DNA from: Macrostomum lignano
Taxonomy: Eukaryota
NCBI GenBank assembly: GCA_002269645.1
Contig: NIVC01000390.1
Location: 248,001-312,000 of the forward strand
Length of the DNA: 64,000 nt
Reading direction: 5' to 3'
Positions within the stretch are counted from its first letter, which is position 1; the number at the start of each line of letters is the position of its first letter. The translations under genes and the position numbers were made by a program. This document shows positions 38 to 50,957 of the stretch, in pieces. Under the pieces are notes generated by a model, which saw nothing but the letters and a program-made list of their open reading frames with translations, was not told the DNA's origin and made no database searches.

Positions 38-640
38 TACCCCACAGTGTTTAGCCTGGCCGGACCCTGCTACCCCACAGTGTTTAGCCTGGCCGGACCT
101 GCTACCCCACAGTGTTTAGCCTGGCCGGACCCTGCTACCCCACAGTGTTTAGCCTGGCCGGACCTGCTACCCCACAGTGTTTAGCCTGGCCGGACCCTGC
201 TACCCCACAGTGTTTAGCCTGGCCAGACCTGCTACCCCACAGTGTTTAGCCTGGCCGGACCTGCTACCCCACAGTGTTTAGCCTGGCCGGACCCTGCTAC
301 CCCACAGTGTTTAGCTTAGCCGGACCCTGCTTACCCCACAGTGTTTAGCCTGGCCGGACCCTGCTACCCCACAGTGTTTAGCTTGGCCGGACCCTGCTAC
401 CCCACAGTGTTTAGGTTGGCCGGACCCTGCTACCCCACAGTGTTTAGCTTCGCCGGACCCTGCTACCCCACAGTGTTTAGCCTGGCCGGACCCTGCTACC
501 CCACAGTGTTTAGCCTGGCCGGACCCTGCTACCCCACAGTGTTTAGCCTGGCCGGACCCTGCTACCCCACAGTGTTTAGCCTGGCCGGACGCTGCTACCC
601 CACAGTGTTTAGGTTGGCCGGACCCTGCTACCCCACAGTG
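38..640. repeat. 33-bp minisatellite (CCCCACAGTGTTTAGCCTGGCCGGACCCTGCTA)n in an intron of the C2-domain gene
   Basis: About 18 near-identical units read directly; explains the repetitive ORF 341..910. Confidence 0.97.
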
Positions 641-652
641 TTAGCTTGTCAC

Positions 653-2175: not shown

Positions 2176-4349
2176 ATGTCCGGAAGAAGTCTGCCAGAGC
2201 AATGCTCCAAGTCTGGGCCAGCTTTCTGCGCTTGGCAGTTCCCCAATGTCTCCATGTCGGCCGCCACGGACGCCAAGACTCACTCGCAGCGGTGGAGCGT
2301 GCACCCGGGATTTCTCGACCCATTCCACGTGGTCTACCAGTGCGTGAAGCGGCTGAAAGCGGCCACGTACGTCAACGTGAAGTACGCCAGCAAGCTGCGC
2401 CCCGTAGAGGTCCGAGAGCAGCCACCGGATAAGACGCAGCTGTGCTTGGGTCTTCAGATCTACCTTACCAAGATCGTACCTGATGAGAAGGTGCGTTTTT
2501 GTTAACAATGCCGACTTGTTTGGAGAAAAAGATGATTCTTGAATTTTTTGCTGTTTGAGATGTTTGACTGGAACTAAAGTCATTGACAACTGTACATGCG
2601 TTAAGCTGCCGAAATTGCCCCACAACCAGCGCTGAGGCGATTCTGTCCATTCCGCTGACTCCTGAGCACAAACAAGCGCGCCAGTACTGTACGCAGGCAC
2701 GCACTCAGGCACACGCTCACACAGGGTGTACACCTTTGACTTTCTAATCGTCAGGCATGTACACTCTCTGCGGCTTGGGGGCTGGCTCTCACGGGTGGGA
2801 ATCGCGCGACAACCCTCTGCCAATTTTCGGGCACAAGCCACAAATTAATGTGGCCGCGAGAGAGTCGGGAGCGTTTACCGTTGAGCTGCTCTGCCACCAC
2901 TGATCGTTGGCAGGAAGTTGGTTCATCAAAGTCTCAAGTTTGACTCAGTGTTGACAAAACGCGTTTGCGTTTTAACTAAGGATGGGCTAATTTTGATTTG
3001 ATTTTAATTTTGACAAGTTCAATCGGGCTCTATCCTCTTAGTTTTTCTAGGTCTACTGCCCTGGCTTAAGACTTGGACTGACTTAGTATCCTATCCAGTT
3101 TATTCTCTTTCATCATTCGTGATGTTTGTGTGCAACCGGACACTTGCTAGAATCTTTCAACGTCGATGAGAATCCGTTTGGCAATTCGACACTCGCCAAC
3201 AACAGTCTCCGTGCACTGAGTAGGTGCTGTTTTGGCTGTTCTATTCAATGCTCAAAATGGATTTAAAAGTCAATCTCTCAAGCAAAGCAAAATGGTCAAA
3301 GCAAGCAACTTGTATTTCAGTGCTAAGTTATTGCCTAGTTACTGCTCAGACGGAGTTACCTGGCCATCAATATGGTGTCGTGGAACCGTTGCATTCAAAC
3401 AGGCTGTTTTTAAACCTATGTACTCGTAGATCGATAATAACTATTCTTAAACTACCCTGCACATACTACTGCTAACCAACTATGCCAGGTTAACTATGAC
3501 GTGAAGGAGCACATTAAAAACGGCTCATCCGAGAACGTGACCGCCGTGATTCGCAAATACGCCTGCTTGGAGCACGTGCTGCTGTTCCTGCTCAAGTACC
3601 TGAAAGAGCGCGGTCCGCTGATGAAGTTCAAATACAATTCCACCAGCCTGCTGAACGAGGTGACAGCCAATCCTCGCTATATGGTGTCAACTTTTCTCAC
3701 CACCCTGTGCGAATTCGAACTGGACTTTCACGCCGCTGTGGTGCTTGGAGACTACCTAAACTTCGTCCTGTACGTCGCCTACGCCCACGACCTGTTCTGG
3801 ATGAAGGAGCTGCTGTCCGAAATCTGGGCCCCGCTCCTCATCGACTTCATCAACGTTGGCGATCGAGTTGCTGACAACCTGACTGATGCGCAGAAGACCG
3901 GCAAGCAGCGCCTGATGATGCAGCGAATGATTGACACCCTGCCCTGGGAGAAGCTGAAAAGCCAGGAGAACATCAAGATCACCGTCAACCCGCAGATTCA
4001 CGATTCTTACTTGAAACGGAAGGCGGCGGAGGCAGCCAGCCTGATGCAGCGGCTGACCACCAAGCCGGTTCACCAGACCACTCTGCTGACTGGAGGTGGC
4101 GGCATCACCAAGCTGCTGGGCAGCCTCGACACCAAGGGACCGGAGATTCTCGGCGATGATCCGGCCGCAATCGCGGCTCGCGAAGCCGAGGAACTCGAGA
4201 AGAAGAAACGCGAGGAGGAGGCCGTGAAGCGAAAGGCGATGGAGGACGAGAATCGCGACTATAGCAGCGACTACGGCTACAGCCAGGACTTCCTTGAAAA
4301 GCACGCGCCTCACGGCATGTGCAAGCCGGGCTTTGACAACACATTGTGA
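2176..4349 (+). CDS. Two-exon gene (2176-2490, 3489-4349; about 391 aa), divergent RhoGAP-fold protein with a charged C-terminal tail
   Basis: Donor AAG|GTGCGT at 2491 and acceptor CCAG|GTT at 3488 join in phase 0. PFHVVYQCVKRL, LLKYLKERGPLMKF and YLNFVLYVA..M..LSEIWAPLL align by eye to RhoGAP helices. An acceptor at 2148-2149 may add 5' sequence. Confidence 0.6.
2596..2896 (-). mobile_element. tRNA-derived SINE, family A (near full length)
   Basis: Head GGCAGAGCAGCTCAACGGTAAACG and body GCGATTCCCACCCGTGAGAGCC..GAGAGTGTACATGCCTGACGATTAGAAAGTC..GTGTGAGCGTGTG are shared with copies at about 19700, 20600, 22150, 28550 and 53230. Confidence 0.75.
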
Positions 4350-9000: not shown

Positions 9001-10308
9001 CAACTGCAAGGTCGGGGGTTCGATTCTCGACCCACTCGGAACAATTTGTGTCCTTCAGCCAGACACTTAAATATCTGCATTGCTTCAGTTCACCCAGCTG
9101 TAGTTCCACAGCTCTTCAGTTCACGAGCTGTAAAATGGGTGCCAGAATTAAGCTGGGGTAATTGGGGGTATGTAGGGCGACCCCCCAGTCCTTGGACCTT
9201 GGATTGAACAGCCGTACCCAGCCTTCAGATGCCCCGCGCAATAGCTGCGGCTGAGCTGTCAGTTGCTCGCCTGCCCATTGGGCAGGTGCAATCAATTATT
9301 ATTACTAAGTTGAAACATGACCCAGAATGTCTTTTGAGTCTGTTTGGCTCCTATTTCAAGGTTACGAGCGTAAAATCACTAAGGCTCTGGTTCCCAAAAG
9401 CAAGCGTAAAGTAGACGAGTAAATACGAGCATACTTGAGCAAAAAAGGTAAATTATACTTTTTTATTGAAACGATGCCTAGCATAGTAAAGGAGAAAAAA
9501 GTCTGTAAAATACGCCAAGCTTTGCTAGAATAGGCCCAGGGAAAACAGTATGCCTCTGAAATGCTCCACTCTGATCTACAGGAGTCGCCTGGCCGGGTCT
9601 GTACGCCTGAGCTGGCTCAGCCTGGCTGACAACTATCGCGCTCACATGGAGGAGCCTGAGGCCCGTTTGCTAATCGGCTTCGACGGCAATTACGTCAGCC
9701 TGGCTGAGCTCCCGCCCGGGCGCCTCACCGATGCCATCCGCCTTGTCCTACTACGGCGCCTCGTAGACTGTTGGGCCAGCCTGTCCAGCCTCGCTCACCG
9801 GCCGAGCGACTACCGGCCTTCCTGCGTCCTGCTGCGACGCCGGCATCCTGACGAAGCCGAGCAAATCCAAGACATTGACGGCCTGGCCAGCGACGAGGCG
9901 TTTGCGGACCCGACTCTGACGATCTCCTCGGAGGGCGATGCCGGGTCGCTGGCCGCCTGCGCTGCGTCGCTGTTCGTTCACGAGTGCCGCGACAAGGACA
10001 ACGATGCAGTTACCAATGCTGCCGGCTGGGACGCGAGGCAGGCCAGCGAACTCCAGCTGCTGACCGGGGATCGAGACCGCTACCTGGCCGGGCTGAGGCG
10101 CCGGCTTGTCCGAGACGGCCGGCCGGAGGGTCTCATCACCGGCGTCGTTCGCTGCGTTCGCGCCTGCCTCGAAGCCTCGAATTTAGATGCAGAATCGCTG
10201 AGCGATGGTGCCGACGAGAGAGAGCAGCTGGCAGCTTTGCGGATGAAGAAAATCCAGGAGGCGAGGGCTGAGTTACAGACGGCTGCTGGCGCCATTGAAA
10301 AGCAATGA
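6072..10308 (+). CDS. Four-exon gene (6072-6770, 6957-8391, 8652-8856, 9582-10308; 1021 aa): dynamin-like GTPase, helical region and degenerate kinase domain; DSTYK-like
   Basis: G1 GRSNTGKS, G3 DSPG, G4-like NRID. Donors GTAAGA 6771, GTGAGC 8392, GTTAGT 8857 and acceptors at 6956, 8651, 9581 give phases 0, 1, 2 and an open 3066-nt CDS. The C-terminus resembles the DSTYK kinase (KPRF, LTDAIRL, HRP, RDGRPEGL). Confidence 0.8.
8966..9306 (+). mobile_element. tRNA-derived CORE-type SINE (family B), intact copy in intron 3 of the GTPase gene
   Basis: A-box GGTAGCCTAATGG, B-box GGTTCGATTC, MIR/CORE-like TGTGTCCTT..AGACACTTAA..TTGCTTCAGTTCAC..CTGTAAAATGGG and an (ATT)n tail. A second copy is at 31955. 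Confidence 0.85.
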
Positions 10309-11199: not shown

Positions 11200-11395
11200 A
11201 GATGATTTCGCAGGCGCTCTTATGTGCCGGTGGCCTAGGTTCGATTCCAAGTGCGATCGCATTGATTTGGGTCGACGGAGGGCCGCTGTACGTATTCGCG
11301 TGCTCAGGGGAGTCTGCGGAATGTTTAATAATGCCCCTCGCCGGTTCTGGGACATGTCGCTTAAAGTGCGCTAGGGTGCATGCAGCCCCCCGTAT
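11200..11395 (+). mobile_element. Internally deleted SINE family A copy
   Basis: B-box GGTTCGATTCC at 11238-11248, then GTGCTCAGGGGAGTCTGCGGAATG..GGTTCTGGGACATGTCGC matching the 3' part of other copies. Confidence 0.55.
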
Positions 11396-11858
11396 TTACT
11401 AAAAAATTCAACTCGTCCAGACTCACTGTTCAATAATCATGTATCAATAAAAGTTAAAATCAAGGACGACTCGTAGAAGTAAACTGACATATTTGCGAAA
11501 TGTAGCAAGGAAAAGTTTCAAAGGCCACATTTAATGGAAATCGAATAAGATTGGACTGAGAATCGGACATTATTCGATTTTTTCAGTTGTTGTCTCTATG
11601 CTTTCATCCACATCCTGGTCTCAGCTGGGCCATTTATGCGTGTACAATAAAAATTCTATTGTAATTTTACAAGCCGTGCTTAAACTGACAACTTCTTTAA
11701 GCATCTCCTATCGCCCATAGACAGGCGTCAAGTTTTCGAGTAAATGCTAATAACGCGTTTGACAATATTAGCAGCATAACAAACACCAACTAACTGACAT
11801 GGTGAATTGCAGATTGTAGCAATTTGCATTGCTATTTACCAGCCACACACGGCTAGCC

Positions 11859-12329
11859 ATGCACGGCACTGACTGTTGCGAAAACTGGCCGGAACGGGAG
11901 CAGCAAGAGCAGCTTCTGCAAGAAGACGCAGTGAACTGGAAGGACTGCATCCACCGTTGGAAGTGTAGCCGAGAGAAATGGCGCCAGGAAACGGTGAAGC
12001 TGCAAAGCCAGCTGTACGACATGACACACAGCGCCTTTCACTGGCGCAAGCAGGTCTCCATAGTCCACAGCGGGCTGACCAAGATGCACGAATCTTTGCT
12101 TAACTGGCAAGCCGAAGCTCATCGTTGTCGGGAAGCGTCGCAGCAATGGCGGAATGAGAGCTACCTGTGGCGAGAACAGGCACAGCTGTGGAAAAAGCAG
12201 TGCAGCGAGCTGATGGAGCGAGTGGACAATCATCAGATTGCTCAGCTGCACCAGGCCAGGCACCTGTATTGCGCACAGATGAGGCAGCAGTACGAAGGCC
12301 AGTCGCAGTCCTGTTGTCCGGCGCACTAA
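11859..12329 (+). CDS. Single-exon 156-aa coiled-coil protein with a tryptophan heptad repeat
   Basis: GC-rich coding-like ORF with an acceptor-like TTTACCAG about 17 nt before the ATG. Trp lies at residues 27, 34, 41, 62, 83, 97, 104 and 111, all in one heptad register. Confidence 0.75.
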   Translation: MHGTDCCENWPEREQQEQLLQEDAVNWKDCIHRWKCSREKWRQETVKLQSQLYDMTHSAFHWRKQVSIVHSGLTKMHESLLNWQAEAHRCREASQQWRNESYLWREQAQLWKKQCSELMERVDNHQIAQLHQARHLYCAQMRQQYEGQSQSCCPAH

Positions 12330-13279: not shown

Positions 13280-16200
13280 TCAAGCGCCTCGTTCGATTTG
13301 GTATCGTCCACCAGCTGGCTGGGCAGCGAATTCCATCATTTCCACCTCCGACCGCGGCTTCGGTTCCGCAGCGGCTTCGCCAGCGGCCGATTCGCTCACG
13401 GGAACGTCGTATTCCGGCTCGGCTTCCTTCGCGCCGCACGCTCCTTTCTTAGACATGCAGTTAATCAATTGTACAAGAGCTACGCCAAGAAGGATTCCTA
13501 GAATGCCAAGCAGCCCCCACAGGCCCTGAAGCTGCTGCGATGCCAGTGTTGCACTCGCAGTACTGGCTGAGGTAGGAGAGGGAGAGGCAGCCGGTTGGGT
13601 GTCGCCGGTTGCGAGGCAGGTGAGGCCGGCGCACGCTCCCTCTGCAGCCTGCTTGGTGCACCAGCCGTCGCCTCCAGCTGGTCCGGATCTGAGCTGGGAA
13701 CTCAGGGATTCGGCTGACTTGCTAAATGAAGTAGTGACTCCATTGTAGTTCCCCACCTGGGAAATTAATAAAGTCGGATTTGCATATTTTTCTAGGTAAA
13801 TGCACCTAGTATAATCTTCAAGTCCTAATCACGTCTTTGTTCAGAATCAATTTACTAACAGTATTTTTTGCTTTCTATGGGTAAGTGTGCTTTGACAGTT
13901 TTCGTTCAAATATCTTCAACGTCCTTAATTAAGTCTTCTTCAGAAGTCCTTAGGAGCCATCACTAAGTTATTCGGCTAACATCAGAATCATCGCACCTGC
14001 ACGTATCGATATCCTCCGGTGGATTCGTTGCGGTACTGCCACACAGATACAGAAAGCCGGCCCATTCGGTTTTCGAAAATCTTCTGGTAAACCCATGGCG
14101 TGCCGGCACTTGTTCCGGAGAAACGTTGCGGATCTCCTACGACTTCGGTGCCATACATAATCAGATTCGCTCGCTTTGCCTGTCCAGACTTTCCAGCTTT
14201 GTAGAATGCCGAGCACACCGGCTCACTGGTCACTGTTGAGCAGAGGTAGGTCACAGCTGTCAGCGTTCCCAAAACAAGCGTTTCAGTGGCGTGGATTACC
14301 AACGGCGTTCGGGACTCCAAGCTGTCCACCGCAACTCGACTAGCTATCACATCGCCGATGCACGGTTGGCTGTACAGCGAATTTCGAATGAACGACTTAG
14401 CAAGGTAGCACCGATTGAGGCTCTCGAAGTGCAGTCGGTCCCACTGGCTCAGCCGGTTTGGATTGGTCGGCATCGAAGCTGCCCAGTAGCGCTCGTAAGC
14501 CAGAAATGCCGGCGACTCGGCCGCTTCAAACTGCATAGACAATGCCCCAATGCCGACACTGTTGCGACCTGCATAGGCGGCTTCGGACGTGCCAACGGAC
14601 TGTGTTGTAAGAAATGTCACGTTTCCAATGTCAGTCACGACCTGGTCGTAGTTTAGAATCGCCTGAAAGCTGCTCAAATCGGCTAAAAATGGAACGTAGC
14701 GAGCTTTCGATTCACGCAGACGAGCTAGAACCACTTTTTTGCATGCATCATCACCCGTTTTGCAGTTGTGCAGGATTATCTGGCCAATGCAGAGGCCATT
14801 TTCTGGAGCGCGCTGAATCATTTCATCTTTTAGTGACGTTCCAAATGCCGTATCAACATAGACTACAACAATGTACGTCACTTTTAGATGTTTGAGTATG
14901 TTGAGCATGATCTGAACAACAGTACTTGTTGAAACTCCAGTTCGAAGTACATTAGGATATTCTGCAAAGTTGCTCAATGAGCCTGCAGTTGAGCCATATG
15001 TTATTAGAGGTAGGTTGTAGGTCTTAAGCAGCTGTGAAGCCTGAGCTGTCTGGGAGCTGCCGTGTGCGCCGACAAAGCCGACCACCTTAGTGAAATTGAA
15101 GCCGGGCGCGGAGGCCAGGGTGCCGTCCAGCAGGCTGCCCAGACGCCGCACGGTGCAGCTGGGCGAGTAGCAGGTGTCCAGCACAACGTAGCCCCAGCGG
15201 AGCTTTTTGGTGCGCCCGTCGTGAACTCGCTGCAGCAGGTCTCTCACTCCGCGCAGGAAATTTTGGTCCACTTGCGACGTGTTGAAGCCCTGTGGCATTG
15301 GAGAGCCCTGGCTCAGCGCGTCCACCAGATCGACAACGAACTTGAAGGCCATCGCAAACTCGTAGCCACCTACGTTTTGAGTTCTAAAAGTGCCGTCTTT
15401 GCAGTTAAATCGGTCATTTCCTCTGTAGAAAATTGGAATTAAAACTCCCAGGTAGATGTCTCCCTCCTTGAATTGGATGAACTGCTTCTCAGATTCGCTC
15501 ACGCACTCAGGGCAACTGGCCGGACACTCCGAGGCGGTGCTGTTGGTCTCTTTAGGGAAGATGTCCGGATTCCCGCTCGTCAGCTCGTAGAATCGGCTCC
15601 TGCCGGAGACATCCAGCTCGTAGGTCTGCGCGATTGTACCCGCCTGCCTGACGATCATCTCGCCGAGTTTCACCAGCGAGTAGCTTGTGCCGCTCAGCTG
15701 GCTCTGGTAGATCTTCGCTATTGGCTGCCAGAAGCCGCGAGTGCTGTGCTCAAGTCCTCGTTCCATCGAGTACGAGGTAAAGCCAGCCCTGATAAATGAG
15801 TCCAGAATCGTGAGATTAGTTTTCAGCGATGACAGAGTAACGGACTTTTGCCTCAGCCTCTGAATGTCAATTATCGTGCTCAAGCTCGGAACTCCATCGG
15901 CCAGAAGCGGCGCAAGGCTGAGGGCGTGAAAGTCGTAGCGAAGAGCCAGCAGGTAGCAGAGGCTGTTGGGATCCGACCAGGTGCAAAGGCTGCTCGTCGA
16001 CTGCTTGAGCGAGTTCAGCCGACTGTGGGTGTCCCGCAGCTCGGAGAAGCGGCCCATGGACGCCGGGTCGGAGGTGATGTTTGAGAACAGCAGCCGAAGC
16101 TCGTCAGTGGCGACATCGGGGTCCAGAATTCCAGGAAAGATGAAGACCGTACCAAGGGCGAGGTTCCTCCGTCGGGGAGTGTCGGACATCCGGTGGAAGC

Positions 16201-17544
16201 TGCTGAAGGCGGCGCCAACCAGCACCAGCTGGTACCGCTTTTCGGTGTCCGCGAATGCGCTGTCGCTTCCAGACACGAGGTCCCACAGGCGCAGGAAGGC
16301 CGCTCCGGAGCCGACGAAGGCCACAGTGAAGCGGGGCAGCCGCCGGCTGACGTACACGAAGTCCTTTAGTGACCGAGCAGCTTCCTTCACGTTTCTGCTG
16401 GTGAAGCTCAGCAGCAGCGGGAAGCAGACGCTACCGTCTGAGCGCCACTGCGACTGCAGCTGCTGGGACAGGCGGGTCGAGCCGGGCTCCGCCTCCCACA
16501 GGAGGCCCACGTAGCTCCAGCCGCGATCAACGAGAAAACTGTAGGTGACCTGAAGCAAACAGGTGATGCAATGACAATACGATAATAGATATTTGGTAAA
16601 ATCCCGAAATTCGTCTCTCCTTCAAAGCAGAAAAAATCAACACGTCAATCAGTCTCACATTAGACAGCTCGCTAATTGATGGCGCAGCGGTGAGCTGTCC
16701 CAACCGGTCTGTCCGAAAGAATCCTCGCTGCGTACGACCGGGGTCGCTAGTGTAGTCCGTCAGGGCGGGAAGGTAACCGGTCACTGCTGGACGCGAATTG
16801 ACAGCGTCTTCCGACTGTCCGATCAGAGTGAAGTAGGTGCTGACCGAGTTCAACTCTTCAAACTGGCTGGGCGACAGGTGCACTGGGGATGTCAATTTAC
16901 CGGGTTAATGTTTGCTTGGGGATACATTTATTAGTTCTGTGTCGAAAATTTCTTATATTCCATGGTGGTACATAGAAGTACACACAAGCGCTACAAGTTG
17001 GTCGGTTGTACAGTCAATAGCATGTCCGAGGGGTACTACGCTCGTAAACACAAAATTGAACTCACCAAATGTTTGGTTAGTCCTGGCCTTGACCTGGTCA
17101 AGTATATTCGATACCAGCTGACAGGTTTCCACTATGGAGCCGCCACGGTCTGCATCAATTTCGGAAATCTGATTTGATACTTGACCAGTAAACAGAAATT
17201 ATCGTCAGTTTTAGTGCATTGGTGCATTTTTTGCATTGCAATAAGCTCACCTCCCAATGCCTGGAACAGCATGACGTCAAGCAGAGCTTCGCCAAAGTGC
17301 AGACTCAGATCCGGCTGGAGGCTGGCTGTGCACAGACTGCCAGATGAAGCGTTCAGGTTGCGTGTGTGCTGGTACCATGGCTCCGCTGAGGCTGCATTGT
17401 TTAAATACAAGTGTATAAAACTATATTTAGAGTCAAATTTCTAGTATGAAAGGTACGAAGACATTACAAATTACCTGACGTAATAGCCAACAACAGTGCG
17501 CCAAACGCTGCACGCATTGCCAGGTTGAAGCTTAAAGCCCGCAT
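13280..17544 (-). CDS. Six-exon gene (17544-17475, 17391-17251, 17179-17066, 16882-16659, 16549-13997, 13756-13280; 1192 aa): type I membrane protein with two tandem mGluR-like Venus flytrap domains and one TM helix
   Basis: Signal peptide MRALSFNLAMRAAFGALLLAITS. The second VFT has EGDIYLGVLIP, LDTCYS, VVGFVGAHGSS, ITYGST and YVQVGNY. Single TM LWGLLGILGILLGVALVQLI. All splice phases are consistent (3579 nt), though one acceptor is a weaker AAG. Confidence 0.82.
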
Positions 17545-19123: not shown

Positions 19124-22100
19124 GCTGCCGGGACACTCGCGCTGCCGGACGCATGCGCCGTTGTACAGCTGGCGGCGGCCCCGACAGACGCAGCCCGGTC
19201 GGCAAGGCTGCGGACAAGCCGGCTGGTGCGACCGGGGCAGCCGGTGCCCGCAGCGGGACTGACAGGCGCAGTCGGAGTAGCGGAAGCCGCGCGGGCACAC
19301 CTTGTTGGCGCCGGTGCACGGGAACTGAGCGAGGTCCAGCACCGGCGACTTCTTGCGGGCGCACAGCTTCAGCACGGTGCGCACCACCGGGCAGATGCAC
19401 TTCGTGACGCTGTCCCGGTGGCATTTGCACATCTCCTCGACGCACCAGCTGAAATTTCGCGGAAGCCATGGAGATAAAGCATTTGAGTATACGAGCTTGA
19501 TTCAAATTCATGAGCCTAACTCCAGTGACTCAATAAATTCGATGAATTGCATGTCAACGGGAAAGTCAGGAGCGCCTGCACGGCCGGCGGGTGTTTAATA
19601 GCTTTGGTAAGACGGTGAAAAGGACGGTGATTGGAAGTGACGACTCGTCACGTTGTAGTCCCCTACTCGGATTCCGCCAAATACCGCACGCAAATTTGGC
19701 GTTCGTGCCCTTGCGTCGCGGGGGTACTTGTACATACCCAGACGATGAAAAAGCTAGAGCACCCTCTGTGTTAGCTTGTGCCTGCGTAAATATCTGCGCG
19801 AGTATGACTGTCACTTTGGTTTGCGATTGCACCCCAAACTATCAATAATTAACTAGCTAAAAGAAACTAAAATTAAAAAACCCGCGCCAGCCTACTTGTA
19901 GTAGGGCGTCATGTTGACTGCGCCGGCGCACTCGAGCCGGCGGAGAGGGCGGCAGTACTGCCGGGCCCAACGGCGTTGCCGCCCGTTCAGCAGGCAGTTG
20001 CTCTTAGTCCGATGGTCGGCTCTGCAGAAGCCTTCGCGCCAGGCCCGCGTGAACTCCCGCTGCGAGTGGAACATCTCGCCGTTGACGCCGAGCGAGTCGT
20101 CGTCCGACCTGCCGTTGTAATTTCCGCAGAGGCCGCACAGGTAGCCGCCGAGGCTCTTCGGCGCCTGAACTTCTAGGAAGCTGCGGCCGTCCCAGACTAT
20201 ACGAACGCCGTTTAGTAGACGCACCTGGACGAATGAAATTAAACGGGACAACTTGTAGTTTACACAGAGTTTAGACAGCAGGGACAATTAGTTTGTGCGT
20301 TTCGCAGTTTATGGAAATTTATTAAAAGGTATAATTTTGCTTCAAAATTCATAGGCTAGATAGACCTAGACAATTTTTAGGTTTTATCACTTAAATGAGC
20401 TACTTTCTCACTTTTTAAGGTTGCGAATATACGAGCGTATTTTGAAGTCAGGGCTGAAGTGCCTCAATTTTTTTAAATTAGTTCAGAAAAAAATACCATG
20501 GAGACGGGCAAACAAACAAAATTTAGCCAAATATTGTTGCTCCTCCTTTCTATTTTTTAATCAACCTTCAATCAATTTAGGAAGCATAAAAAGATTTACT
20601 GAAGTGCTGCGGCCACCTACCGCAACGCCTTCAGGGACATTGTCCCAAACAATCTTCCCGCGACAATACTGTGCGCAGACACGCACTGATACACACGCTC
20701 ACACAGGATGTACATCAGCCCTGACTTTCTAAACATCAGGCATGTACACTCTCTGTGCCTTGAAGGTTGGCTCACATGGCTGTGAATTGCAAGACAACCC
20801 CGGCCAAAGTGGATGCGAACTTGAAAGTCAAAATGGAGCCTGCAGCATTGATTTCTTTACGCCAATTCCTTCATTTGGAGCTTCAAATGCTTAAATTACG
20901 AGATTACCGTGATAAACCCTTTTCTATTTTTTTGAAGAATAGGATCGATAGTAATGTTCTTTTATGCCCCCATTATGTATCTCTTAATAATGTTTATGTT
21001 ATTCCCCCACCCCAGCTCTCATTGTGTTTTTCCCCCGCCTTGACAGAGACATACATGGCGTCAAGGGGGTTTGTAACACACATTTTAGACAGACGACTTC
21101 TACGAGCGGAGGTTAACCCGACGTTTTGAGACGGAGAACTACCTTCTTGACGAAAAAATACGCTGAAAGAAGTCCCCGAGACATTTGAGACTTTGATATG
21201 CGTAAAACCACAGCTTAAATCGTTCAAATAATACAGGAAGGTTTCCAATCGCATGAAATCCCCATTTATCCCATAAAGATCTCGGGTTTTCAGCATAACG
21301 GGAGCTTTTTGGCTCCAAATGAAGGGATTGGCTTAGAGAAATTGGAACCCAATGCTTCAGGCTCCATTTTGACTCGTAAGTTCAACATCCCCTTTTCTTG
21401 CTCAAGCTCCCAACTAATGTGCCCGCGCACGGCATCGAATCAGGGGTCCTGTCAGACGCGTTTGCCGCTGAGCTGGTCTGCCCCTGAGAAGGTGAAAAAT
21501 AATAGTTTTCAAACGCATCTGAACCGGATTCGAACACTATCGACAATAGTAACCTTACGTGCTCGTGATACAGGATTTTGAAGCTTGTCTTTACTCTTAC
21601 TGCTCACCTGCAAGTAGCCGTTCAGCGTAGCGACAGAGAGCCAGCCGCCGTTGCGAATGCTGCCCAGGCTGATGCGGCGGCCGTTGAGTCGCAGCTTGAA
21701 GCCGGCCCCGACACTCAGCCGGTTGCGCAGGATGGCGATCTGCAGCGCCCGGCCACGCCTGCCGTACGCAAAGCGAATGCGGAACTTCGAATAGCGTTCG
21801 ACGCACAGCTTAACCAGGGTATACCTGCACCGTTCTCGCATGTGCACTATGCTGGCATCGAAGGTGCGCAGCAGCGGCCGACCGAGCACCGAGCAGGAGC
21901 CGAACTTCTCCACGCACTGGGGGCAGCACTGGCCTGGCCGAGTCTCCAGCTCATAGCCAGGCGCGCATCCGTTGCGCTGATCGGCGCAGTCTGGCTTGCG
22001 GCACGAGATCTGTCCGGCGCGGCAGATGCAGTGCGAACAGGTGTCCGGCTGCCACTGGGCCGCGTGCTGCGGAAGTGAATGAGTTGGGACAGACACAGGG

Positions 22101-25100
22101 CGTGGGATTTTTCTGTTAGTTAGTTAGTGGATCGGTTTGTATCTGCTATGACCATTCCGCTGCCCCCCGAGCGGGCACACAATAAGGGCGAGAATCGCCC
22201 GACAAGCCTTAGGCCAATTTTCGGAATCCAACCCGGGGGCACTTTGCGCAAGAGTTATCTGTCAGCGATCTACGCTCGTACGTTGTCTCTGAGTTCTCCT
22301 CTGAGCAAGCCAAGTAAGTGAAACTGTCTTCTGTTCTTGATCGACGGGGAAAGTATTGATTTTTAGGATTAGTGCCAACTCCCATATTGTAACTTACAGC
22401 AATGTAACTTAGTTCTACCAGCGATCGAGTTCAGCTCGTTAGTCGCTTATCAGTCATTAAGAAGTTGCACTTCTATCCCAGACTGACGGGTTAAGAATCA
22501 GGCCAACTACCAGTTGCTTGAAATTGCTGAATCAGCTTACAATGTAATCTTGGCTTGGCCTTCCTTGTACTCGTCCTTCCCCGGTGATTAAACAGAGTTG
22601 AGTTGAAGCGCTCACTACTAGTAGCATAGGCGCCTTCCACTTGCAACATGGCACAGGCTCATGCCTTAATGAGGCCTCCGCGCCCCACCCCCAACCCCCC
22701 CCCCCCTGAACCAGGCAGTTCATGGGGTCAGTCAGCGGTCGCAATCAACGAGCAATTTCGTCGCATTCATTCGGCATCCCCAGCAGCTGCCCAGCGGCTC
22801 TCCCCACCTAACCCGAAGAAGCAGCTGTCGAAAGGCTGCAAAGCAAACAGTGCGCGCTTGCCGACGGATGGTAGAAGAAATCCTGGCCAGCCTCCCCTAG
22901 CTTAGTAAGGAGAGCTGCTGCAAAGTGTAAATTTGCCTCAAACCCCTTCCCGACCACCGAAGCGGGTGTCGAGCTTTACCAGCTTTGCGCAAAGACTGAG
23001 GGCCGGCGGACTTAGTTAAAACAAACTCTCTCTCTCTCTTGTCGAGTGCGTGCGAAAAATTAGCCGCCCACCCCCTGCTGCGCAAGCGATTTTAAAGCCC
23101 AATAATCCAAGTCGCCGCGCGTGAGCCACCTGGTGCGCATTCCCCCTGTGCCTCATAGTTATGCCTATTATTTTATGGCCCGAGCCTGACTTTGTAGCGG
23201 CTTTTTTAGGCTCATTATAAATTTCTTACCTACTTACGACTAGATGTGAGCGGGCGGTGGCCTTTGGTGGAAGGCTCCTTGACCCTGTGCAGGGTGTACA
23301 CAAATACATTTATACTGTGCCTTGGGTTGCCTCAGGGTGATTGCGCCAGCAAAACAGACCCGTTGTACAGCTACCAGAGTCTTCAGGTGCCCTGGTCTTT
23401 CGCTATTCTACATGTAGCTCTCTTTTCAAAATCCAGTCGCCAATAGTCATCAATAGGTGTTAATGTCCAGCTGAAGTTATTGTGTGTTCCAATTAGCCTC
23501 TGAAGCTAGAAATTCACTTGAATAGTCAAAAGCTCAGTGCAATGTGGGGACCAACTGTGTCAGGTTTTTACATTGAGAAGGCGCTGCCGGGACATGACAG
23601 AATGACGTAAACTGATGGAACATTAGCAAAATATTTGCTTAGATGAAACACGGCAGCGGATTGGTCGATTAGCGAAAGCAACTGGAAGAGATTTTTGCAA
23701 GACAGCCGATTCCAAGAATCACAAATGCAGGCCGTAGGCTCTATTTCGGCTTCATTCGATGCTTCATCTCTCGGCCATCGCGGGACGGGCGGCCCCGTCA
23801 GGACCGGGGGCTGAAGTCATTCTTACCTTGTACCGCCTGCCGCTCGGGTCCACGCAGTCCCGGCTGTCGCGACACACCGGACAGCAGTCGCCCTTCGGCT
23901 GGAAGTAATCCTTCTCGGCGCATTCCAGCACCGGACAGTTCTGGCGTCGGCACACAATGGTCCCGTGCTGCGGGAGGGGACAGACAGGGATAGGAGGCAG
24001 CGCCGCGTCAGGTTGGGAAAACTATACGGTCTAAATGGATCCTTGAGTGGCCCTCCGCGGGTGGTGGAGGGGGCCCGCTAATGGCCGGCCCTTGGCATCA
24101 TCAACAACATCAGGGGGGGGATAGCGGAGCGGGCGGAGACGGAATTCCAGACCAGATCGGAATCCCTTAAGTGGCTCCCCCATCTTTCCGCTTGTCCGGC
24201 CGCTGTGTCTCTCATGTTGGCAGCCGGCCACCGGGCCCGTGGACCCTCCTGCGGGTCCGGTGTTTACATTAGTAGCAGCATTTGCCACGCAGCCTCAAAT
24301 CCCCCCGCCGCCGCCGTCACCGGCCAGTGGTTAATTTTCGATGTAGCCGCATTTAGCTTATTTAGCTAAGGCTAAGAATAAAGCTATAATCAACAGTAAA
24401 CTCTCGAATATTTTTCAGGCGTTCAAGAGTATGCTCCAATTTCTTGAATCGTAAAATAAAAGTAAATTCGAAAAAGAAAATTGCATCAGTTCAAGCCGTT
24501 ACATTTTTAATGTTGCTGGTTTGACTGACCTTGAAACAACTAGTTTCGTAATTTTTGTTTAAAATTGTCGCTTGCTGCTCTTTTGTCTAGCTAGAGCACC
24601 TTCAATGGCTGAAGAGAAGCTGAAAGGGGCTGCACAAGGAGTGCTGAACAGGGAGTGCTGAACAGGGAGTGCTGAACAAGGAGTGCTGAACAGGGAGTGC
24701 TGCACAAGGAGTGCTGAACAGGGAGTGCTGCACAAGGAGTGCTGAACAGGGAGTGCTGAACAGGGAGTGCTGAACAGGGAGTGCTGAACAGGGAGTGCTG
24801 AACAGGGAGTGCTGCACAAGGAGTGCTGAACAGGGAGTGCTGCACAAGGAGTGCTGAACAGGGAGTGCTGAACAGGGAGTGCTGAACAGGGAGTGCTGAA
24901 CAGGGAGTGCTGAACAGGGAGTGCTGCACAAGGAGTGCTGAACAGGGAGTGCTGCACAAGGAGTGCTGAACAGGGAGTGCTACACAAGGAGTGCTGAACA
25001 GGGAGTGCTGCACAAGGAGTGCTGAACAGAGAGTGCTGAACAGGGAGTGCTGAACAGGGAGTGCTGAACAGAGAGTGCTGAACAGAGAGTGCTGAACAGG

Positions 25101-28100
25101 GAGTGCTGGACAGGGAGTGCTGAACAGGGAGTGCTGAACAGGGAGTGCTGAACAGGGAGTGCTGAACAGGGAGTGCTGGACAGGGAGTGCTGAACAGAGA
25201 GTGCTGAACAGGGAGTGCTGAACAGAGAGTGCTGAACAGAGAGTGCTGAACAGGGAGTGCTGGACAGGGAGTGCTGAACAGGGAGTGCTGAACAGGGAGT
25301 GCTGAACAGGGAGTGCTGGACAGGGAGTGCTGAACAGGGAGTGCTGAACAGGGAGTGCTGAACAGGGAGTGCTGGACAGGAGTCGCTGTAAAGAGATTTG
25401 AGTGCTGTACGGGGGGTGCATGGCCTGTTAACTTGTGTGGGCGACTCGTAATAAAACGATTCGCGCGATGCCGTCTCAGCGAAGATTATTAAAGCATAGA
25501 AAATTTTTATATAGCAGCTTCTTGTCAGTATTGTGTGCTTTGAGAAGGCTAGGCCTCAGCTAAGCTACACATCACTGGAGCACACAATAAAAGGCTTTGT
25601 AGCAATAAATTTGCAGCATAAACCAGCATAAGCCTCAACAGTTTACAACCGCGCCGCCTTGCAAAAGAGAAAGCGAAAAAGCGCAGCAGCAGATGAAAGA
25701 GACTAAAAAGCGATTAAACAGACCCTCATTAAAACCAAAACATGGGAGGCTGTTGAAACTGGTGTGGACATATTCATATTAAACAGTCCTATCAACCACT
25801 TGAGCATTTTTGAGACAACAACCTGCCTGTCTATCCGGTGAAGAGGCTCTGAGAACGCGTCGCTAAGTCGCTTAGATTCTCGGGTCAATCTCAGGGGTCA
25901 AGAGATCCATTTTGACTCACCCGGCACGAGCAGTCGGTGCATCGGTCAACACTCCAAGCCGTAGTGTTTGAGTAGGTTTGGCCCTGGAACAGGCACTGCT
26001 GCTCGGCGGGCTTCGCTCGAGCCTCGGCGCCTGAAACGGCTGAAAACGGACAGAATGGGACCGAAGTGGCCTCAGTTGGCAGTGATAGAAATAGCGATGG
26101 GTTAAAGTTATTAAAACCACTGGCAAGCGGTGGGGTTAAATCAACCGATTGTGCCAGGAAAGGGTCGAATATTTTGGGATAGGATTAGTCGGAGCGGGAT
26201 TCGGCCATTTTCACCGATAATTTAGGTAGGACAAGGGCTAGGCCAACTCCATCCGGTCCTTCGGCCCCCATAACTTCACAATAGCAATCATTTATCTACG
26301 GAAACGAGTATGTAGCTTTTGAGCTATTTTTACTTGAAGAAACATTTTGAACTTTCGACTCTTTAACGGTTTTTTCTCGTTCCTGCCATCCCGGACAACT
26401 TTGAACGCTTGTGGAATGGCTACCTGAAAAGTAATATTGAAAAAAACTTTTTCCTGATTCTAGTTTGCTATATGATCCAAACCTGATGCACACCTAACAC
26501 CTGGTGGATTAATGATTAGTAGAACCTTCACCTGGCTCACTAGCTTGTTTTCTGTGAGTTCTCTAGGCAGTCCTAAGGGATTGCTAGACTGACGCATGGC
26601 CTTGGATACCTGTGGAGTATCAGGTGATTCTGGCTACGGTTCCGAGGGATGGGGCTACCTACTGACCTATAACAGAGTATACGGCCAGTCCAGCGAGCAG
26701 TTCATGAACCTTTGCCTGTGCACTTGGGTTCGGGGCCCGCTTTAGCCGTGCCTCCCCGATGCATCCGCACTAAATCCGAGCAAAACTAAAGTTATCAACT
26801 GTACTACTCTCACCTGAGCACGCGAGACAATGCCCGCTGTGGGTCTGCTCAGCTGGCGGACAGTTCACCAGCTGGCAGGCGTCCTTGAAGCAGCTCAGCA
26901 TGCCGCCCTCGCAGCGACAGACAACCGACTGGTCTTCGAATGGCCGAACGTTCTGATCAGGACTGACCAGCATGTTCTTCACAGTGCAGCCGAAGCAGCT
27001 GAAACGGTTGATGATGGATCGGAGTCGCTTTCAAGAGCAGCTTCAGGCAACAGGAAATTCCTGCAAACTATTCGCTAATTCAAAATTCATTCCCGAGGAC
27101 GAAGGCCCGGCCATTATTTTTGATGATCTTAAAAACAGCTCTGTCCCTCTCTCTGCCCCGGTCCCTTCCCGGCATCACAGGAGAAAATGCAAAATGCAAA
27201 GGTGTTGATAAAGCTCAGGTGGAGGCTTCAGCAGTTCCGCTTTAATCATCGGAGCTCCCGAGGAAAAGCTCCCTTCCCGAGGAGATGAGGCCGGCAGGAA
27301 AGAAACGCGAGTATGTCGTAATTGACAGCCAGCCCATGCAGCCGGGCTCTGGGGGACTGCTGTATTCCTATTTCAACTCCCTTAAGACCTTCCGCCTGCT
27401 TCGTTAAAATATTTTAGCAAAAAAGCCTCTTGCATGGACTCAAAGAGGCCTCTGGATTTTACTGACTGGCCAACCGAAGCATTTATGTTTTAGATCAAAG
27501 GAATGCGCTCTTAGATTAAATATCTACGCATTTAGACTAGAGATTTACACATTTAGACTAGAGATCTACGCATTTAGACAAGAGATCTACACATTTAGAC
27601 TAGAGATCTACGCATTTAGACAAGAGATCTACACATTTAGACTAGAGCTCTACGCATTTAGACTAGAGCTCTACGCATTTAGACTAGAGATCTACGCATT
27701 TAGACTAGAGCTCTACAAATTTAGACTAGAGATCTACGCATTTAGACTAGAGCTCTACAAATTTAGACTAGAGATCTACGCATTTAGACTAGAGATCTAC
27801 CCATTTAGACTAGAGATCTACAAATTTAGACTAGAGATCTACGATTTAGACAAGAGATCTACACATTCACGCCCTAAAAATCTACACATTTAGACTAGAG
27901 ATCTGCACCTTTAGACTAGAGATATATGCATTTAGACTAGAAATCTACACATTAAGACTAGAAATCTAAGCATTCAGACTAGAGATCTACGCATTTAGAC
28001 GAGAGACCTACACCCAGCAGAACTGCAGAAAGCGCCCTAATCAGACATCTGTGCATGAAGTAACTACTTATCAAATAAAACACCATAGCACCCATTCGCG

Positions 28101-31954: not shown

Positions 31955-32163
31955 GTAGCCTAGTGATTAGAGCGTCGGACTCACGACATGAAGGTCGGGG
32001 GTTCCATTACCGATCCCACTGGAACTATTTGTGTCCTTGAGCAAGACACTTAACTCTGCATTGCTTCAGTTCACCCTGCTGTAAAATGGGTGCCAGCATT
32101 AGCAGGGGTAATTGAGGGTGTGTGTGGTGACCCCACAGTTCTTGGACTGAACATCCGTACATC
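31955..32163 (+). mobile_element. CORE-type SINE (family B), 5' part, interrupted by a LINE
   Basis: tRNA-like head and the CORE block TGTGTCCTTGAGCAAGACACTTAACTCTGCATTGCTTCAGTTCACCCTGCTGTAAAATGGG at 32030-32090; colinear with 8966-9215. Confidence 0.85.
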
Positions 32164-32642
32164 CGTGCCGGGGCTGTTGCCCCCAGGACCCCGGGTCCTG
32201 CACGTAATGGCGTGGTGAACTATCTGTGTAGTATGAGACTGGTATGGCCTTTATCCCAGCCAGCGATGCTCACACCTGCCTCCCCTGGCGGGCCGATAGC
32301 TCAAGAGACTCTGTCTCCTGATTTTCACCTTGCAAGGCGCACTTCGAAGGGTACTCATCCCGTGGGTGTTAAGGCAGGCCCCTTTGGGCCCTGCCGAGCT
32401 GATTCGTTGGCGCCGGGTCCTGGTGTGACCATAAACGCACCCTCTAATGTCCCAGTGTAACTCCGTGCTGATGGACGCTTGGCCAGGGAGTAGTCTGGTC
32501 GCTAACGGTTCCCCTTGCGCTTTTGGGTCCCCCCGCAGGGTGGTATTTTGCTTTTTGGGGGCCTGCCGCTTGGTTTGGGGTTGCGGCCTTGCGGCTCTTT
32601 GCCTGTGTTCTGCAGGAAGTCCCACTTTTTTACTTCCAGCCA

Positions 32643-37842: not shown

Positions 37843-37958
37843 GCGACTTCACTTCAACGGAAGTCATTGGTCGCCAGGGGCTAGCGGAATGGGCGGTCTC
37901 CTCCGCCTCCCCGCTGCATCCGCCGGACGCCCCCTGCAGCTAAGTCAAGTAAGTCAAG

Positions 37959-38075
37959 TCCGTACATCTGTACGCAGCCTTCAGATGCGCCGCGCAATAG
38001 CTGCGGCTGAGCTGTCAGTTGCACATCTGGCCATTAGGGCAGGTGTAATCATTTATTACCATTATTGTTATTACG
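37959..38075 (+). mobile_element. CORE-type SINE (family B), 3' part resuming after the LINE
   Basis: GCAGCCTTCAGATGCGCCGCGCAATAGCTGCGGCTGAGCTGTCAGTTGC..GGGCAGGTG plus an ATT-rich tail; matches 9220-9306. Confidence 0.88.
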
Positions 38076-38235
38076 CAATAAAAAAATAATTGCATCAACG
38101 GGACGCCGCTCAAATACTTTCCATTGCAAAATAGCCTTGTTAGCTAACTCACAGAAGCTATTGTACTCGTAGTTATCGTAGCTTTGCGTTTCTAAATAAT
38201 TGTGGACTTAGTTTGAAAAACCCTTGGAAAGAAGC

Positions 38236-50867: not shown

Positions 50868-50957
50868 TTTGTTTTAGTTGGACAATATTTTCCTCTCGCA
50901 TCGTCATTTTTCTCTTAGGAAATTTAAAGTAATTTAAATTTAAAGTAAATATAACAG

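What the first reader, a model, noticed from the sequence alone, without database searches (positions are those of the whole stretch)
11859..12329. Natural tryptophan-zipper coiled coil
Seen: residues 20 to 118 in steps of 7 read L W W W L M W V M W C W W W L, an unbroken run of 15 heptads with 8 Trp. The partner position (+4) is mostly small (T, A, S, A, C) after Trp and larger (L) after non-Trp residues. Both ends carry CC pairs. Known: Trp in coiled-coil cores favours higher oligomers such as the engineered Trp-zipper pentamer and is rare in nature. Inference: a lineage-specific fibre, pore or adhesive structural protein.
Basis: partly seen in the sequence, partly recalled or inferred. Interest (0 to 1): 0.7.

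Follow-up and report, generated by a model that had tools for sequence, protein, structure and literature searches.

The report
Flatworm coiled-coil family with tryptophan core
This is a real gene of the flatworm Macrostomum lignano, one of five old paralogues encoding a small protein that is almost entirely one long helix with eight never-changing tryptophans spaced exactly seven residues apart, an unusual natural coiled-coil core whose biological role is still unknown.

Summary
ORF 11859-12329 (+) encodes 156 aa whose residues 20-118 in steps of 7 read LWWWLMWVMWCWWWL. No shuffle out of 200,000 puts 8 of the 9 Trp in one register.

The window is Macrostomum lignano (assembly Mlig_3_7). The gene is annotated there, and that annotation was built from RNA-seq. 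It belongs to a family of five intronless, dispersed paralogue types, found only in M. lignano among 5.8 and 1.84 billion proteins searched.

All eight Trp are invariant, although synonymous sites are saturated (pS 0.55-0.76) and pN is 0.26-0.37. Only the sense frame is open in all five, so the antisense ORF is not the gene.

AlphaFold2 gives one continuous helix (27-121 here, 15-132 in a paralogue; pLDDT about 97), not a hairpin.

Trp sits at heptad position d, position a is mostly small, e is conserved Lys/Arg, and g is polar or acidic. Mean core volume is about that of Leu. This, the invariant Arg at an a position and the g-e' charge pattern favour a parallel, low-order (dimer or trimer) coiled coil, not a Trp-zipper pentamer or pore.

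There is no signal peptide, so a secreted adhesive is unlikely. Oligomer state, expression site and function were not testable here.

The parts
11859..12329 (+). Single-exon CDS of the 156-aa Trp-heptad protein (P0001), stop TAA at 12327-12329. It is a called gene on M. lignano contig NIVC01000390.1.
   Evidence: ORF and translation. Exact protein is a called gene in GCA_002269645.1. Paralogues share the start and the frame. Purifying selection in this frame.
11859..11930 (+). Variable, low-confidence N-terminal segment (residues 1-24). It contains C6C7 and W10. One Cys plus W10 are roughly conserved as C-x3-W in 4 of 5 paralogues.
   Evidence: Alignment A2. pLDDT 44-52 for residues 1-20. No hydrophobic stretch.
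11931..11984 (+). Most conserved block, residues 25-42 (VNWKDCIHRWKCSREKWR). It holds the first Trp triplet W27/W34/W41, invariant C30 and H32, and invariant R38 at an a position. Surface positions are conserved too, which suggests a partner-binding site.
   Evidence: Invariant columns. The only stretch still alignable at DNA level with paralogue loci starts exactly at 11931 (11931-12067, 75% identity).
11916..12224 (+). Unbroken heptad run, residues 20-122. d = L W W W L M W V M W C W W W L; a = A I R T L A V L L A S S A C V; e is mostly K/R; g is polar or acidic.
   Evidence: Heptad tables and conservation by position (d 0.87, e 0.87, a 0.77). No indels within this run among the paralogues.
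11937..12221 (+). Predicted continuous alpha-helix, residues 27-121 (about 14 nm), with no hairpin at G72.
   Evidence: AF2, pLDDT about 95-97 over residues 31-110. Paralogue P0003 gives a single helix 15-132, pLDDT about 98. G72 is not conserved (A/E/S in paralogues).
12147..12203 (+). Second Trp triplet W97/W104/W111, each followed at +4 by a small residue: S101, invariant A108 and invariant C115 (all a positions). In paralogues this module gives the weak Pfam AChE_tetra (WAT) resemblance.
   Evidence: Alignment. Pfam PF08674 19.1 bits, E = 0.0011 for P0008 residues 92-114, below the cut-off of 25.
12228..12296 (+). C-terminal helix, residues 124-146, after a short break at V122-D123. It contains the conserved D-x-Q-I-A-Q-L motif and C138.
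   Evidence: AF2 secondary structure. Alignment.
12312..12317 (+). C-terminal Cys pair C152C153. It is specific to this paralogue.
   Evidence: Sequence. Alignment shows no conserved CC.
11853..12326 (-). Antisense 157-aa open frame, a by-product of the codon composition and not a gene.
   Evidence: It has 3, 1 and 1 stops in the equivalent frame of paralogues P0002, P0003 and P0007. The most variable codon position is the third position of the sense frame.
11840..11842 (+). CAG acceptor-like site after a pyrimidine-rich tract, 16 nt upstream of the ATG. It is a possible spliced-leader or cis acceptor and is not verified.
   Evidence: Sequence tgctatttaccag|cc. The M. lignano SL acceptor motif [T/C]TNCAG (PMC8629364) is matched at 5 of 6 positions only.

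Best explanation
The ORF is a real single-exon gene of Macrostomum lignano. It is one of five old, dispersed paralogue types of a family known so far only from this species.

The product (136-156 aa, no signal peptide) is essentially one alpha-helix of 95-118 residues. Its heptad seam has invariant Trp at eight d positions, mostly small residues (Ala/Ser/Thr/Cys) at a, conserved Lys/Arg at e, and polar or acidic residues at g.

Inference: the helices associate in parallel and in register into a low-order coiled coil. A dimer is most likely, a trimer is possible, and homo- or hetero-typic pairing between paralogues is open. In this model the bulky indoles of each d layer are accommodated by the small flanking a layers ('big-small' knobs-into-holes, so core volume is about that of Leu-Leu). 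They would be capped by the aliphatic or cationic e' side chains of the neighbouring helix.

In such an assembly the invariant Cys115 at an a position would face its twin and could form an interchain disulfide.

The near-invariant, basic N-terminal heptads (residues 25-42), conserved even at surface positions, probably form a docking site for a partner. The protein would then act as an intracellular rod-like adaptor or scaffold rather than a secreted fibre, pore or glue.

Shown here: gene reality, selection, Trp invariance and the predicted helix. Inferred only: parallel orientation, oligomer number, disulfide, docking function and cellular role.

The confidence of 0.6 is for the statement as a whole. 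A real, selected gene encoding a Trp-core coiled-coil-type helix is about 0.9. A parallel low-order oligomer is about 0.6. The adaptor or scaffold role is about 0.35.
For: - Heptad pattern and its non-randomness.
- Source organism and called gene. The GenBank annotation is derived from RNA-seq assemblies plus TransDecoder (PMC5730564).
- Family is restricted to M. lignano in word-indexed (5.8 billion) and full HMMER (1.84 billion representatives) searches.
- All 8 Trp, R38, A59, A108, C30 and C115 are invariant across the paralogues.
- pS is 0.55-0.76 (saturated) against pN 0.26-0.37. The third codon position is the most variable. The sense frame is the only frame open in all five.
- AF2 gives a single long helix at pLDDT about 97-98 in two paralogues, with no hairpin.
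- d and e are the most conserved heptad positions. Mean core volume is 150-159 A3 against 167 A3 for Leu.
- Parallel g-e' pairs: 2-4 attractive, 0 repulsive. Centred antiparallel e-e'/g-g' pairs: 4-8 repulsive.
- No hydrophobic N-terminus or TM segment.
- From established coiled-coil rules (my own knowledge): Arg/Lys at a positions and polar e/g flanks are typical of dimers, or at most trimers and tetramers. Barrels of 5 or more helices need hydrophobic e/g positions.
- A natural trimeric coiled coil (phage T7 gp17 shaft) shows the analogous Phe/Trp-xxx-Ala heptad: alignment, E = 0.11, a resemblance and not homology.
Against: - Orientation and stoichiometry therefore rest on simple rules only.
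- The middle heptads (residues about 66-94) have a weak, poorly conserved core (Ala/Thr/Gly at d in some paralogues), so the rod may be interrupted or flexible.
- No gene-level expression data were found. The supplementary tables held are truncated.
- The window copy is the most divergent member (pI 7.2 against 9.1-10.4, K+R 20 against 27-29, single contig). It may function differently or be under relaxed constraint (dN/dS up to 0.41).
- The function itself has no direct evidence.
Confidence: 0.6

Rival explanations
1. WAT-like sheath. The two Trp triplets (W27/34/41 and W97/104/111) work like the tryptophan amphiphilic tetramerisation (WAT) peptide of acetylcholinesterase. Several parallel helices would wrap as a supercoil around a proline-rich (polyproline II) partner, with the indoles stacking on prolines. 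The Trp ladder would then be a ligand-binding surface, not a self-packing core.
For: - Pfam AChE_tetra (PF08674) is the family hit by the most members (4 of 7). The best hit is 19.1 bits, E = 0.0011, on P0008 residues 92-114. The window protein is hit at residues 26-43.
- In WAT, equally spaced Trp and a nearby Cys build a four-helix supercoil around the PRAD polyproline II helix (PMC1285061).
- From my memory of the WAT peptide sequence, the local motif (R-Q-W-K-x-E-x-x-R-W-x6-W-K-x-Q) looks shared beyond the Trp themselves. No tool alignment was obtained to confirm this.
Against: - All hits are below the Pfam gathering score of 25; the window protein scores only 8.5 bits, E = 2.2.
- Hits of similar strength (E about 0.003-0.05) go to de novo designed TIM barrels that merely share W..W......WK. 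Trp-rich matches at this level are therefore noise.
- The WAT chain itself did not appear in the PDB sequence search.
- By my recollection WAT has large aromatic or hydrophobic residues at W+4, whereas this family has Ala/Ser/Cys there.
- WAT acts in the secretory pathway, and this family has no signal peptide.
- The helix is about three times longer than WAT.
Confidence: 0.08
2. High-order Trp-zipper bundle or pore. The Trp residues drive assembly of five or more helices into a barrel, fibre or channel.
For: - The engineered Trp-zipper (PDB 1T8Z, Liu et al. 2004, cited in PMC4619341) is a pentamer.
- Eight Trp lie in one seam.
Against: - Trp occupies only d; a is small, so the average core volume is not enlarged.
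- e is Lys/Arg and g is Ser/Glu/Gln, so there is no widened hydrophobic seam.
- An invariant Arg sits at an a position.
- There is no TM segment or signal peptide.
Confidence: 0.07
3. Antiparallel dimer or intramolecular helical hairpin in which each Trp (d) packs against a small residue (a') in the same layer, bringing the Cys-bearing N and C termini together.
For: - In antiparallel coiled coils the layers are a-d'. Trp against Ala/Ser in one layer would then be sterically complementary.
- A fold at G72 would pair W41-S101, W34-A108, W27-C115, W83-A59 and W97-T45 (by inspection of the sequence).
Against: - AF2 predicts one uninterrupted helix through residue 72 with pLDDT about 97 in two paralogues.
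- G72 is not conserved.
- The e positions are almost all basic, so antiparallel e-e' contacts would be repulsive: 4-8 repulsive pairs against 0-2 attractive.
- The small-after-Trp association is not significant.
Confidence: 0.12
4. Not a functional protein: a spurious ORF, or the antisense ORF is the gene, or the window copy is a decaying paralogue.
For: - The antisense frame 11853-12326 is fully open in the window.
- The window copy is the most divergent member, with dN/dS up to 0.41 against P0007.
- It occurs on one contig only.
Against: - The sense frame is open in all five paralogues, while the antisense frame is broken in three.
- Synonymous sites are saturated while pN is 0.26-0.37.
- All 8 single-codon Trp are retained.
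- The gene is in an RNA-seq-based annotation.
Confidence: 0.04

Closest known systems
Canonical alpha-helical coiled coils (a/d heptad, knobs-into-holes), e.g. tropomyosin-type or leucine-zipper-type parallel dimers
   Same: Unbroken heptad periodicity over about 14 heptads, a hydrophobic a/d seam, charged e/g flanks with favourable g-e' pairs, and a predicted long single helix per chain.
   Different: The d positions are dominated by invariant Trp instead of Leu, and a is dominated by Ala/Ser/Thr/Cys. The e position is unusually conserved and basic. There is no sequence relationship to any described coiled-coil family.
Engineered tryptophan-zipper pentamer (PDB 1T8Z; Liu, Yong, Deng, Kallenbach and Lu 2004)
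   Same: Trp in heptad core positions of an alpha-helical coiled coil.
   Different: The design is recalled (from memory) to carry Trp at all a and d positions, which enlarges the core and gives a pentamer. Here only d is Trp and a is small, so core volume is about that of Leu. This protein is natural, about 100 residues long and conserved in a gene family.
WAT (tryptophan amphiphilic tetramerisation) domain of acetylcholinesterase/butyrylcholinesterase, Pfam PF08674, with its PRAD partner
   Same: Trp spaced by exactly 7 on a coiled alpha-helix, Lys/Arg next to Trp, a Cys nearby, and a weak profile match (up to 19.1 bits).
   Different: Below the family threshold. There are two Trp triplets plus two isolated Trp on a helix three times as long. 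Small residues stand at W+4 where WAT, as I recall it, has aromatic ones. No signal peptide and no attached enzyme. A proline-rich partner is unknown.
Coiled-coil shaft of bacteriophage T7 tail fibre gp17 (PDB 7BOZ, 7EY7)
   Same: A natural coiled coil with aromatic residues (Phe/Trp) repeated every 7 and Ala at +4, e.g. FRNEAETFRNQAEGFKNE against WREQAQLWKKQC (alignment).
   Different: E = 0.11, so not homologous. It is mostly Phe rather than Trp, is viral, and (from my knowledge of T7) is trimeric and part of a large fibre protein.

Membership tests
Alpha-helical coiled coil (generic structural class) | Heptad periodicity of apolar residues at a/d maintained without stutters | tested here: met
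   15 consecutive d positions and 15 a positions are in register. There are no indels among the five paralogues in this run.
Alpha-helical coiled coil (generic structural class) | Alpha-helical conformation of the repeat region | tested here: met
   AF2 helix 27-121 (pLDDT about 97) and helix 15-132 in P0003 (pLDDT about 98). This is prediction only.
Alpha-helical coiled coil (generic structural class) | Two or more helices actually associate (oligomer) | not testable with these tools
Engineered Trp-zipper pentamer type | Trp at both a and d core positions | tested here: not met
   a = A I R T L A V L L A S S A C V, with no Trp at a. That the design has Trp at both positions is recalled from memory.
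Engineered Trp-zipper pentamer type | Pentameric stoichiometry | not testable with these tools
   No multimer modelling or biophysics was available.
AChE_tetra / WAT domain (PF08674) | Profile score at or above the Pfam gathering score (25 bits) | tested here: not met
   Window protein 8.5 bits (E = 2.2); best paralogue 19.1 bits (E = 0.0011). Comparable noise hits go to designed TIM barrels.
AChE_tetra / WAT domain (PF08674) | Three or more Trp spaced by 7 on one helix face | tested here: met
   W27/34/41 and W97/104/111.
AChE_tetra / WAT domain (PF08674) | Secretory-pathway context and assembly around a proline-rich attachment domain | tested here: not met
   No signal peptide in any paralogue. 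The partner was not tested.
Single alpha-helix (SAH, ER/K) domain | Very high Glu/Lys/Arg content with i to i+4 salt bridges and no hydrophobic seam | tested here: not met
   K+R+D+E is 26-35% of residues. A conserved Trp/Leu/Met seam is present.
bZIP transcription factors | Pfam bZIP profile match, or the basic-region signature N-x7-R/K immediately N-terminal to a Leu zipper | tested here: not met
   No bZIP family appears among the Pfam hits even at E of 10 or less.

The most novel reading that the evidence does not exclude
The family represents an undescribed natural coiled-coil core type: invariant Trp at d, small residues at a, and Lys/Arg at e capping the indoles. This geometry would fix a particular oligomer state and paralogue pairing code. 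The Trp ladder might additionally (or instead) clamp a partner such as a polyproline II helix, as WAT does, but in the cytoplasm and over about 14 nm.
Probability: 0.25. Interest if true: 0.7.

Novelty: new variant of a known kind. Interest (0 to 1): 0.5.

Why it matters
Trp is among the rarest residues in natural coiled-coil cores. What is known about Trp cores comes mostly from designed peptides and from the 40-residue WAT peptide.

This is a natural helix of about 100 residues in which eight Trp at d positions have been held invariant through duplications old enough to saturate synonymous sites. It offers a ready-made test of how big-small (Trp/Ala) layers and cation-pi capping set coiled-coil radius, stoichiometry and partner specificity, which is useful for protein design.

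For flatworm biology it adds a taxonomically restricted multigene family (at least five types, 1-4 copies each). Macrostomum lignano has RNAi, in situ hybridisation and transgenesis, so the function of such an orphan family is directly testable.

Tried and rejected
- Pfam on the window protein and all paralogues: nothing above threshold.
- PDB sequence search with the family profile and with P0008: only chance-level hits to T7 gp17, Nup133 and designed TIM barrels.
- Foldseek of the AF2 model against the PDB: nothing, as expected for a lone helix.
- Gene-level expression in papers and supplements. The Mlig IDs of the paralogues are absent from main texts and from the held parts of supplements of PMC5816591, PMC7336406 and PMC12896417. 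Those tables were truncated when stored, so the absence says nothing.
- Mlig-sperm1 family considered and rejected. It is conserved in planarians and has a beta sheet plus several alpha-helices, unlike this family.
- A conserved neighbouring partner gene: rejected. The 145-aa neighbours at two paralogue loci are unrelated to each other, and one is a secreted Cys-rich protein. Flanking genes differ at every locus.
- Hairpin at G72: rejected.
- Tandem copies in the window: none.
- Phyletic distribution. The protein collections list these proteins only from NCBI, UniRef and NCBI nr, and every contig retrieved belongs to the one GenBank assembly GCA_002269645.1. It appears that no run-level assemblies of M. 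lignano or other Macrostomum species are included. Absence from other Macrostomum species therefore cannot be concluded.

Full report
**1. What is in the sequence**

The plus-strand ORF from the ATG at 11859 to the TAA at 12327-12329 encodes 156 aa. Writing the protein in seven registers shows one register reading C R L W W W L M W V M W C W W W L H Q A E C. Residues 20, 27...

Eight of the protein's nine Trp lie in this register. None of 200,000 shuffles of the same residues reached that (analytic p about 1e-5).

The residue three positions after each Trp is polar, and the residue four positions after is apolar or small. Trp therefore occupies heptad position d, and +4 is the next a.

The Cys pairs C6C7 and C152C153 are present in this copy.

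**2. Source and gene status**

The exact protein is a called gene on contig NIVC01000390.1 (637,780 bp) of the Macrostomum lignano assembly Mlig_3_7, GCA_002269645.1. It lies between a dynamin-family gene (+) and an ANF_receptor-family gene (-).

The annotation deposited for that assembly was derived from RNA-seq-based transcript assemblies (StringTie/TACO, the TBONE boundary pipeline, TransDecoder; novel transcripts below RPKM 0.5 were discarded). This is described in PMC5730564. An annotated product is therefore indirect evidence of transcription.

I could not obtain gene-level expression values. The relevant supplementary tables are held only in truncated form.

**3. Family**

Three searches were run:
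- a word-indexed search of 5.8 billion proteins;
- a full HMMER profile search of 1.84 billion cluster representatives;
- a cluster look-up.

They returned only M. lignano proteins: Mlig029657 (P0002, four contigs), Mlig013763 (P0003, three contigs), Mlig026474/Mlig005078 (P0007, and P0004 which is truncated), and Mlig023814/Mlig033173 (P0008, and P0005 which is truncated). The one further hit, P0006, is a generic Trp-free coiled coil.

With the window copy that makes five paralogue types, 42-55% identical to it. All are single-exon and sit at loci with unrelated neighbours.

The multiple near-identical copies fit the known redundancy of this assembly.

All sources listed for these proteins are NCBI, UniRef and NCBI nr, and every contig retrieved belongs to the one GenBank assembly. 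Run-level assemblies of Macrostomum therefore appear not to be included. 'Only in M. lignano' means only among annotated genomes, not necessarily species-specific.

**4. It is a selected protein in the sense frame**

- Among the five coding sequences, synonymous differences are saturated (pS 0.55-0.76) while pN is 0.26-0.37.
- Mean pairwise differences by codon position are 0.36, 0.31 and 0.49.
- The sense frame is the only one of six frames open in all five genes.
- The antisense frame that is open in the window (11853-12326) carries 3, 1 and 1 stops in P0002, P0003 and P0007.

**5. Conservation pattern**

All eight in-register Trp are invariant, as are R38 (a), A59 (a), A108 (a), C115 (a), C30 (g) and H32. 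Almost the whole block 25-42 (VNWKDCIHRWK[R/C]SREKWR) is invariant, including its surface positions.

By heptad position, the mean majority fraction is 0.87 for d and for e, 0.77 for a, 0.74 for c and for g, 0.60 for f and 0.53 for b.
- Position e is K K R Q T R x R R R K R K M in most members.
- Position g is C S E Q S Q x x E x E Q.

The terminal CC pairs are not conserved.

The claimed rule 'small after Trp, large after non-Trp' is not statistically supported (Fisher p 0.13-0.62). Overall, though, the a positions are small (mean 120-127 A3) and the d positions large (183-195 A3). This gives a mean core volume of 150-159 A3, close to Leu at 167 A3.

**6. Structure**

AF2 models the window protein as a continuous helix 27-121 (pLDDT about 95-97) followed by a second helix 124-146, with disordered ends. 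It models paralogue P0003 as a single helix 15-132 (pLDDT about 98).

There is no turn at G72, and that residue is not conserved, so the hairpin idea I considered is not supported.

None of the five proteins has a hydrophobic N-terminus or a TM-like segment.

Four paralogues are basic (pI 9.1-10.4). The window copy is neutral (pI 7.15; 11 His; K+R 20 against 27-29) and is the most divergent member.

**7. Most likely mechanism (inference)**

A strict 3.5-residue periodicity kept over about 14 heptads can only stay buried in a left-handed supercoil. A coiled coil is therefore much more likely than a single alpha-helix domain or a membrane-surface amphipathic helix. Charged residues are also only 26-35% of the sequence.

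Several features point to a parallel, in-register, low-order assembly, with a dimer most likely:
- the narrow a/d seam;
- the polar e/g flanks;
- the invariant Arg at an a position;
- the absence of repulsive g-e' pairs (2-4 attractive);
- 4-8 repulsive pairs in a centred antiparallel arrangement.

The dimer-versus-higher-order argument rests on classical coiled-coil rules recalled from the literature, not on a test made here.

Because core volume is not enlarged, the pentamer precedent (Trp at both a and d, as I recall the design; PDB 1T8Z, cited) does not transfer.

In a parallel dimer the invariant C115 at a would face its twin. The conserved e-position Lys/Arg would lie over the neighbouring chain's Trp.

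Surface conservation of residues 25-42, and the basic charge of most members, suggest a docking site for an acidic or otherwise specific partner. My working model is an intracellular rod-like adaptor or scaffold. No experiment or dataset available here addresses the function.

**8. Comparison with known systems**

Pfam gives no significant family.

The most consistent sub-threshold match is the acetylcholinesterase tetramerisation (WAT) domain: 4 of 7 members, best 19.1 bits with E = 0.0011, against a cut-off of 25. WAT is a natural Trp-heptad helix, four copies of which supercoil around a polyproline II helix.

I treat this as a resemblance and not as membership:
- the threshold is not met;
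- equally strong hits go to designed TIM barrels that simply share W..W......WK;
- the W+4 residues are small here, where I recall aromatic or hydrophobic ones in WAT;
- there is no signal peptide.

The family profile also aligns, at chance level (E = 0.11), with the T7 gp17 coiled-coil shaft. That shaft has Phe/Trp every seven residues with Ala at +4. It is a convergent natural example of aromatic/Ala cores.

A review states that about 10% of coiled coils contain aromatic residues at core positions (PMC9698212). I found no description of a run of eight conserved Trp.

**9. Verdict**

The gene is real and under purifying selection. The coiled-coil reading is well supported by prediction. The 'higher oligomer, pore or adhesive' reading is not supported.

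It is a new variant (Trp-d / small-a / basic-e core) of a known kind of structure, carried by a taxonomically restricted gene family of unknown function.

Interest is moderate. It is attractive for coiled-coil structural biology and design, and directly testable in a tractable flatworm, but there is no functional lead yet.

Noticed in passing
window 32000-38100: A GC-rich block (GC 0.58-0.64 against about 0.45-0.52 elsewhere) carries a non-LTR retrotransposon on the + strand. ORF 34143-34994 has AP-endonuclease domains (Exo_endo_phos). ORF 35181-37382 has reverse transcriptase plus RNase H.
   Followed up: partly
window 38-642, 24629-25380, 27511-28011, 43152-43678, 44437-45059, 47993-49010, 50098-50645, 50955-52845, 53371-53678, 57167-57710, 60884-61398: There are many minisatellite arrays with periods of 5-33 nt, up to 118 copies (50955-52845, period 16). 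They explain the strong GC/AT-skew spikes and the long spurious ORFs at 50836-52924 (-).
   Followed up: partly
window 11209-11391; also 2610-2794 (-), 20673-20794 (-), 28566-28624 (-), 53344-53388; L001 9151-9472: A dispersed repeat of about 180 nt lies about 0.5 kb upstream of the Trp-heptad gene. It is in the same orientation at a similar distance (0.5-0.85 kb) upstream of paralogue Mlig029657 in three of its four loci. With synonymous sites saturated between the paralogues, this is more likely independent insertion than shared ancestry, but it could carry regulatory sequence.
   Followed up: no
window up to 10308 (+) and 13280-16558 and beyond (-): The flanking genes are a dynamin-family GTPase (1021-aa product, last exon ORF 9550-10308) and an ANF_receptor/Peripla_BP_6 receptor (1182-aa product). 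The receptor's last exon, 13280-13756 (-), encodes what by eye looks like a hydrophobic membrane-spanning stretch and a tail. It converges on the Trp-heptad gene with about 950 bp between the stop codons.
   Followed up: partly
L009 3336-3856 (-), L010 2482-3002 (-): Next to paralogue Mlig026474 lies a small two-exon gene for a Cys-rich protein with what looks by eye like a signal peptide (start MSQLPCLSAIACLLLAAAIGCQA...; no signal-peptide predictor was run). It is unrelated to the Trp family and is not found next to the other paralogues.
   Followed up: no
window 11859-12329 compared with the paralogues: The window copy has lost much of the family's basic charge (pI 7.15 against 9.1-10.4). 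It has gained His (11 against 2-5) and a Cys in place of the conserved Arg36. It is present on one contig only, whereas three of the other types occur on 2-4 contigs. This may indicate sub- or neo-functionalisation, or relaxed constraint.
   Followed up: partly
P0004 (118 aa) and P0005 (70 aa), other M. lignano contigs: Two annotated family members are C-terminally truncated versions of P0007 and P0008. They may be pseudogenised or mis-annotated copies. I did not inspect their loci.
   Followed up: no
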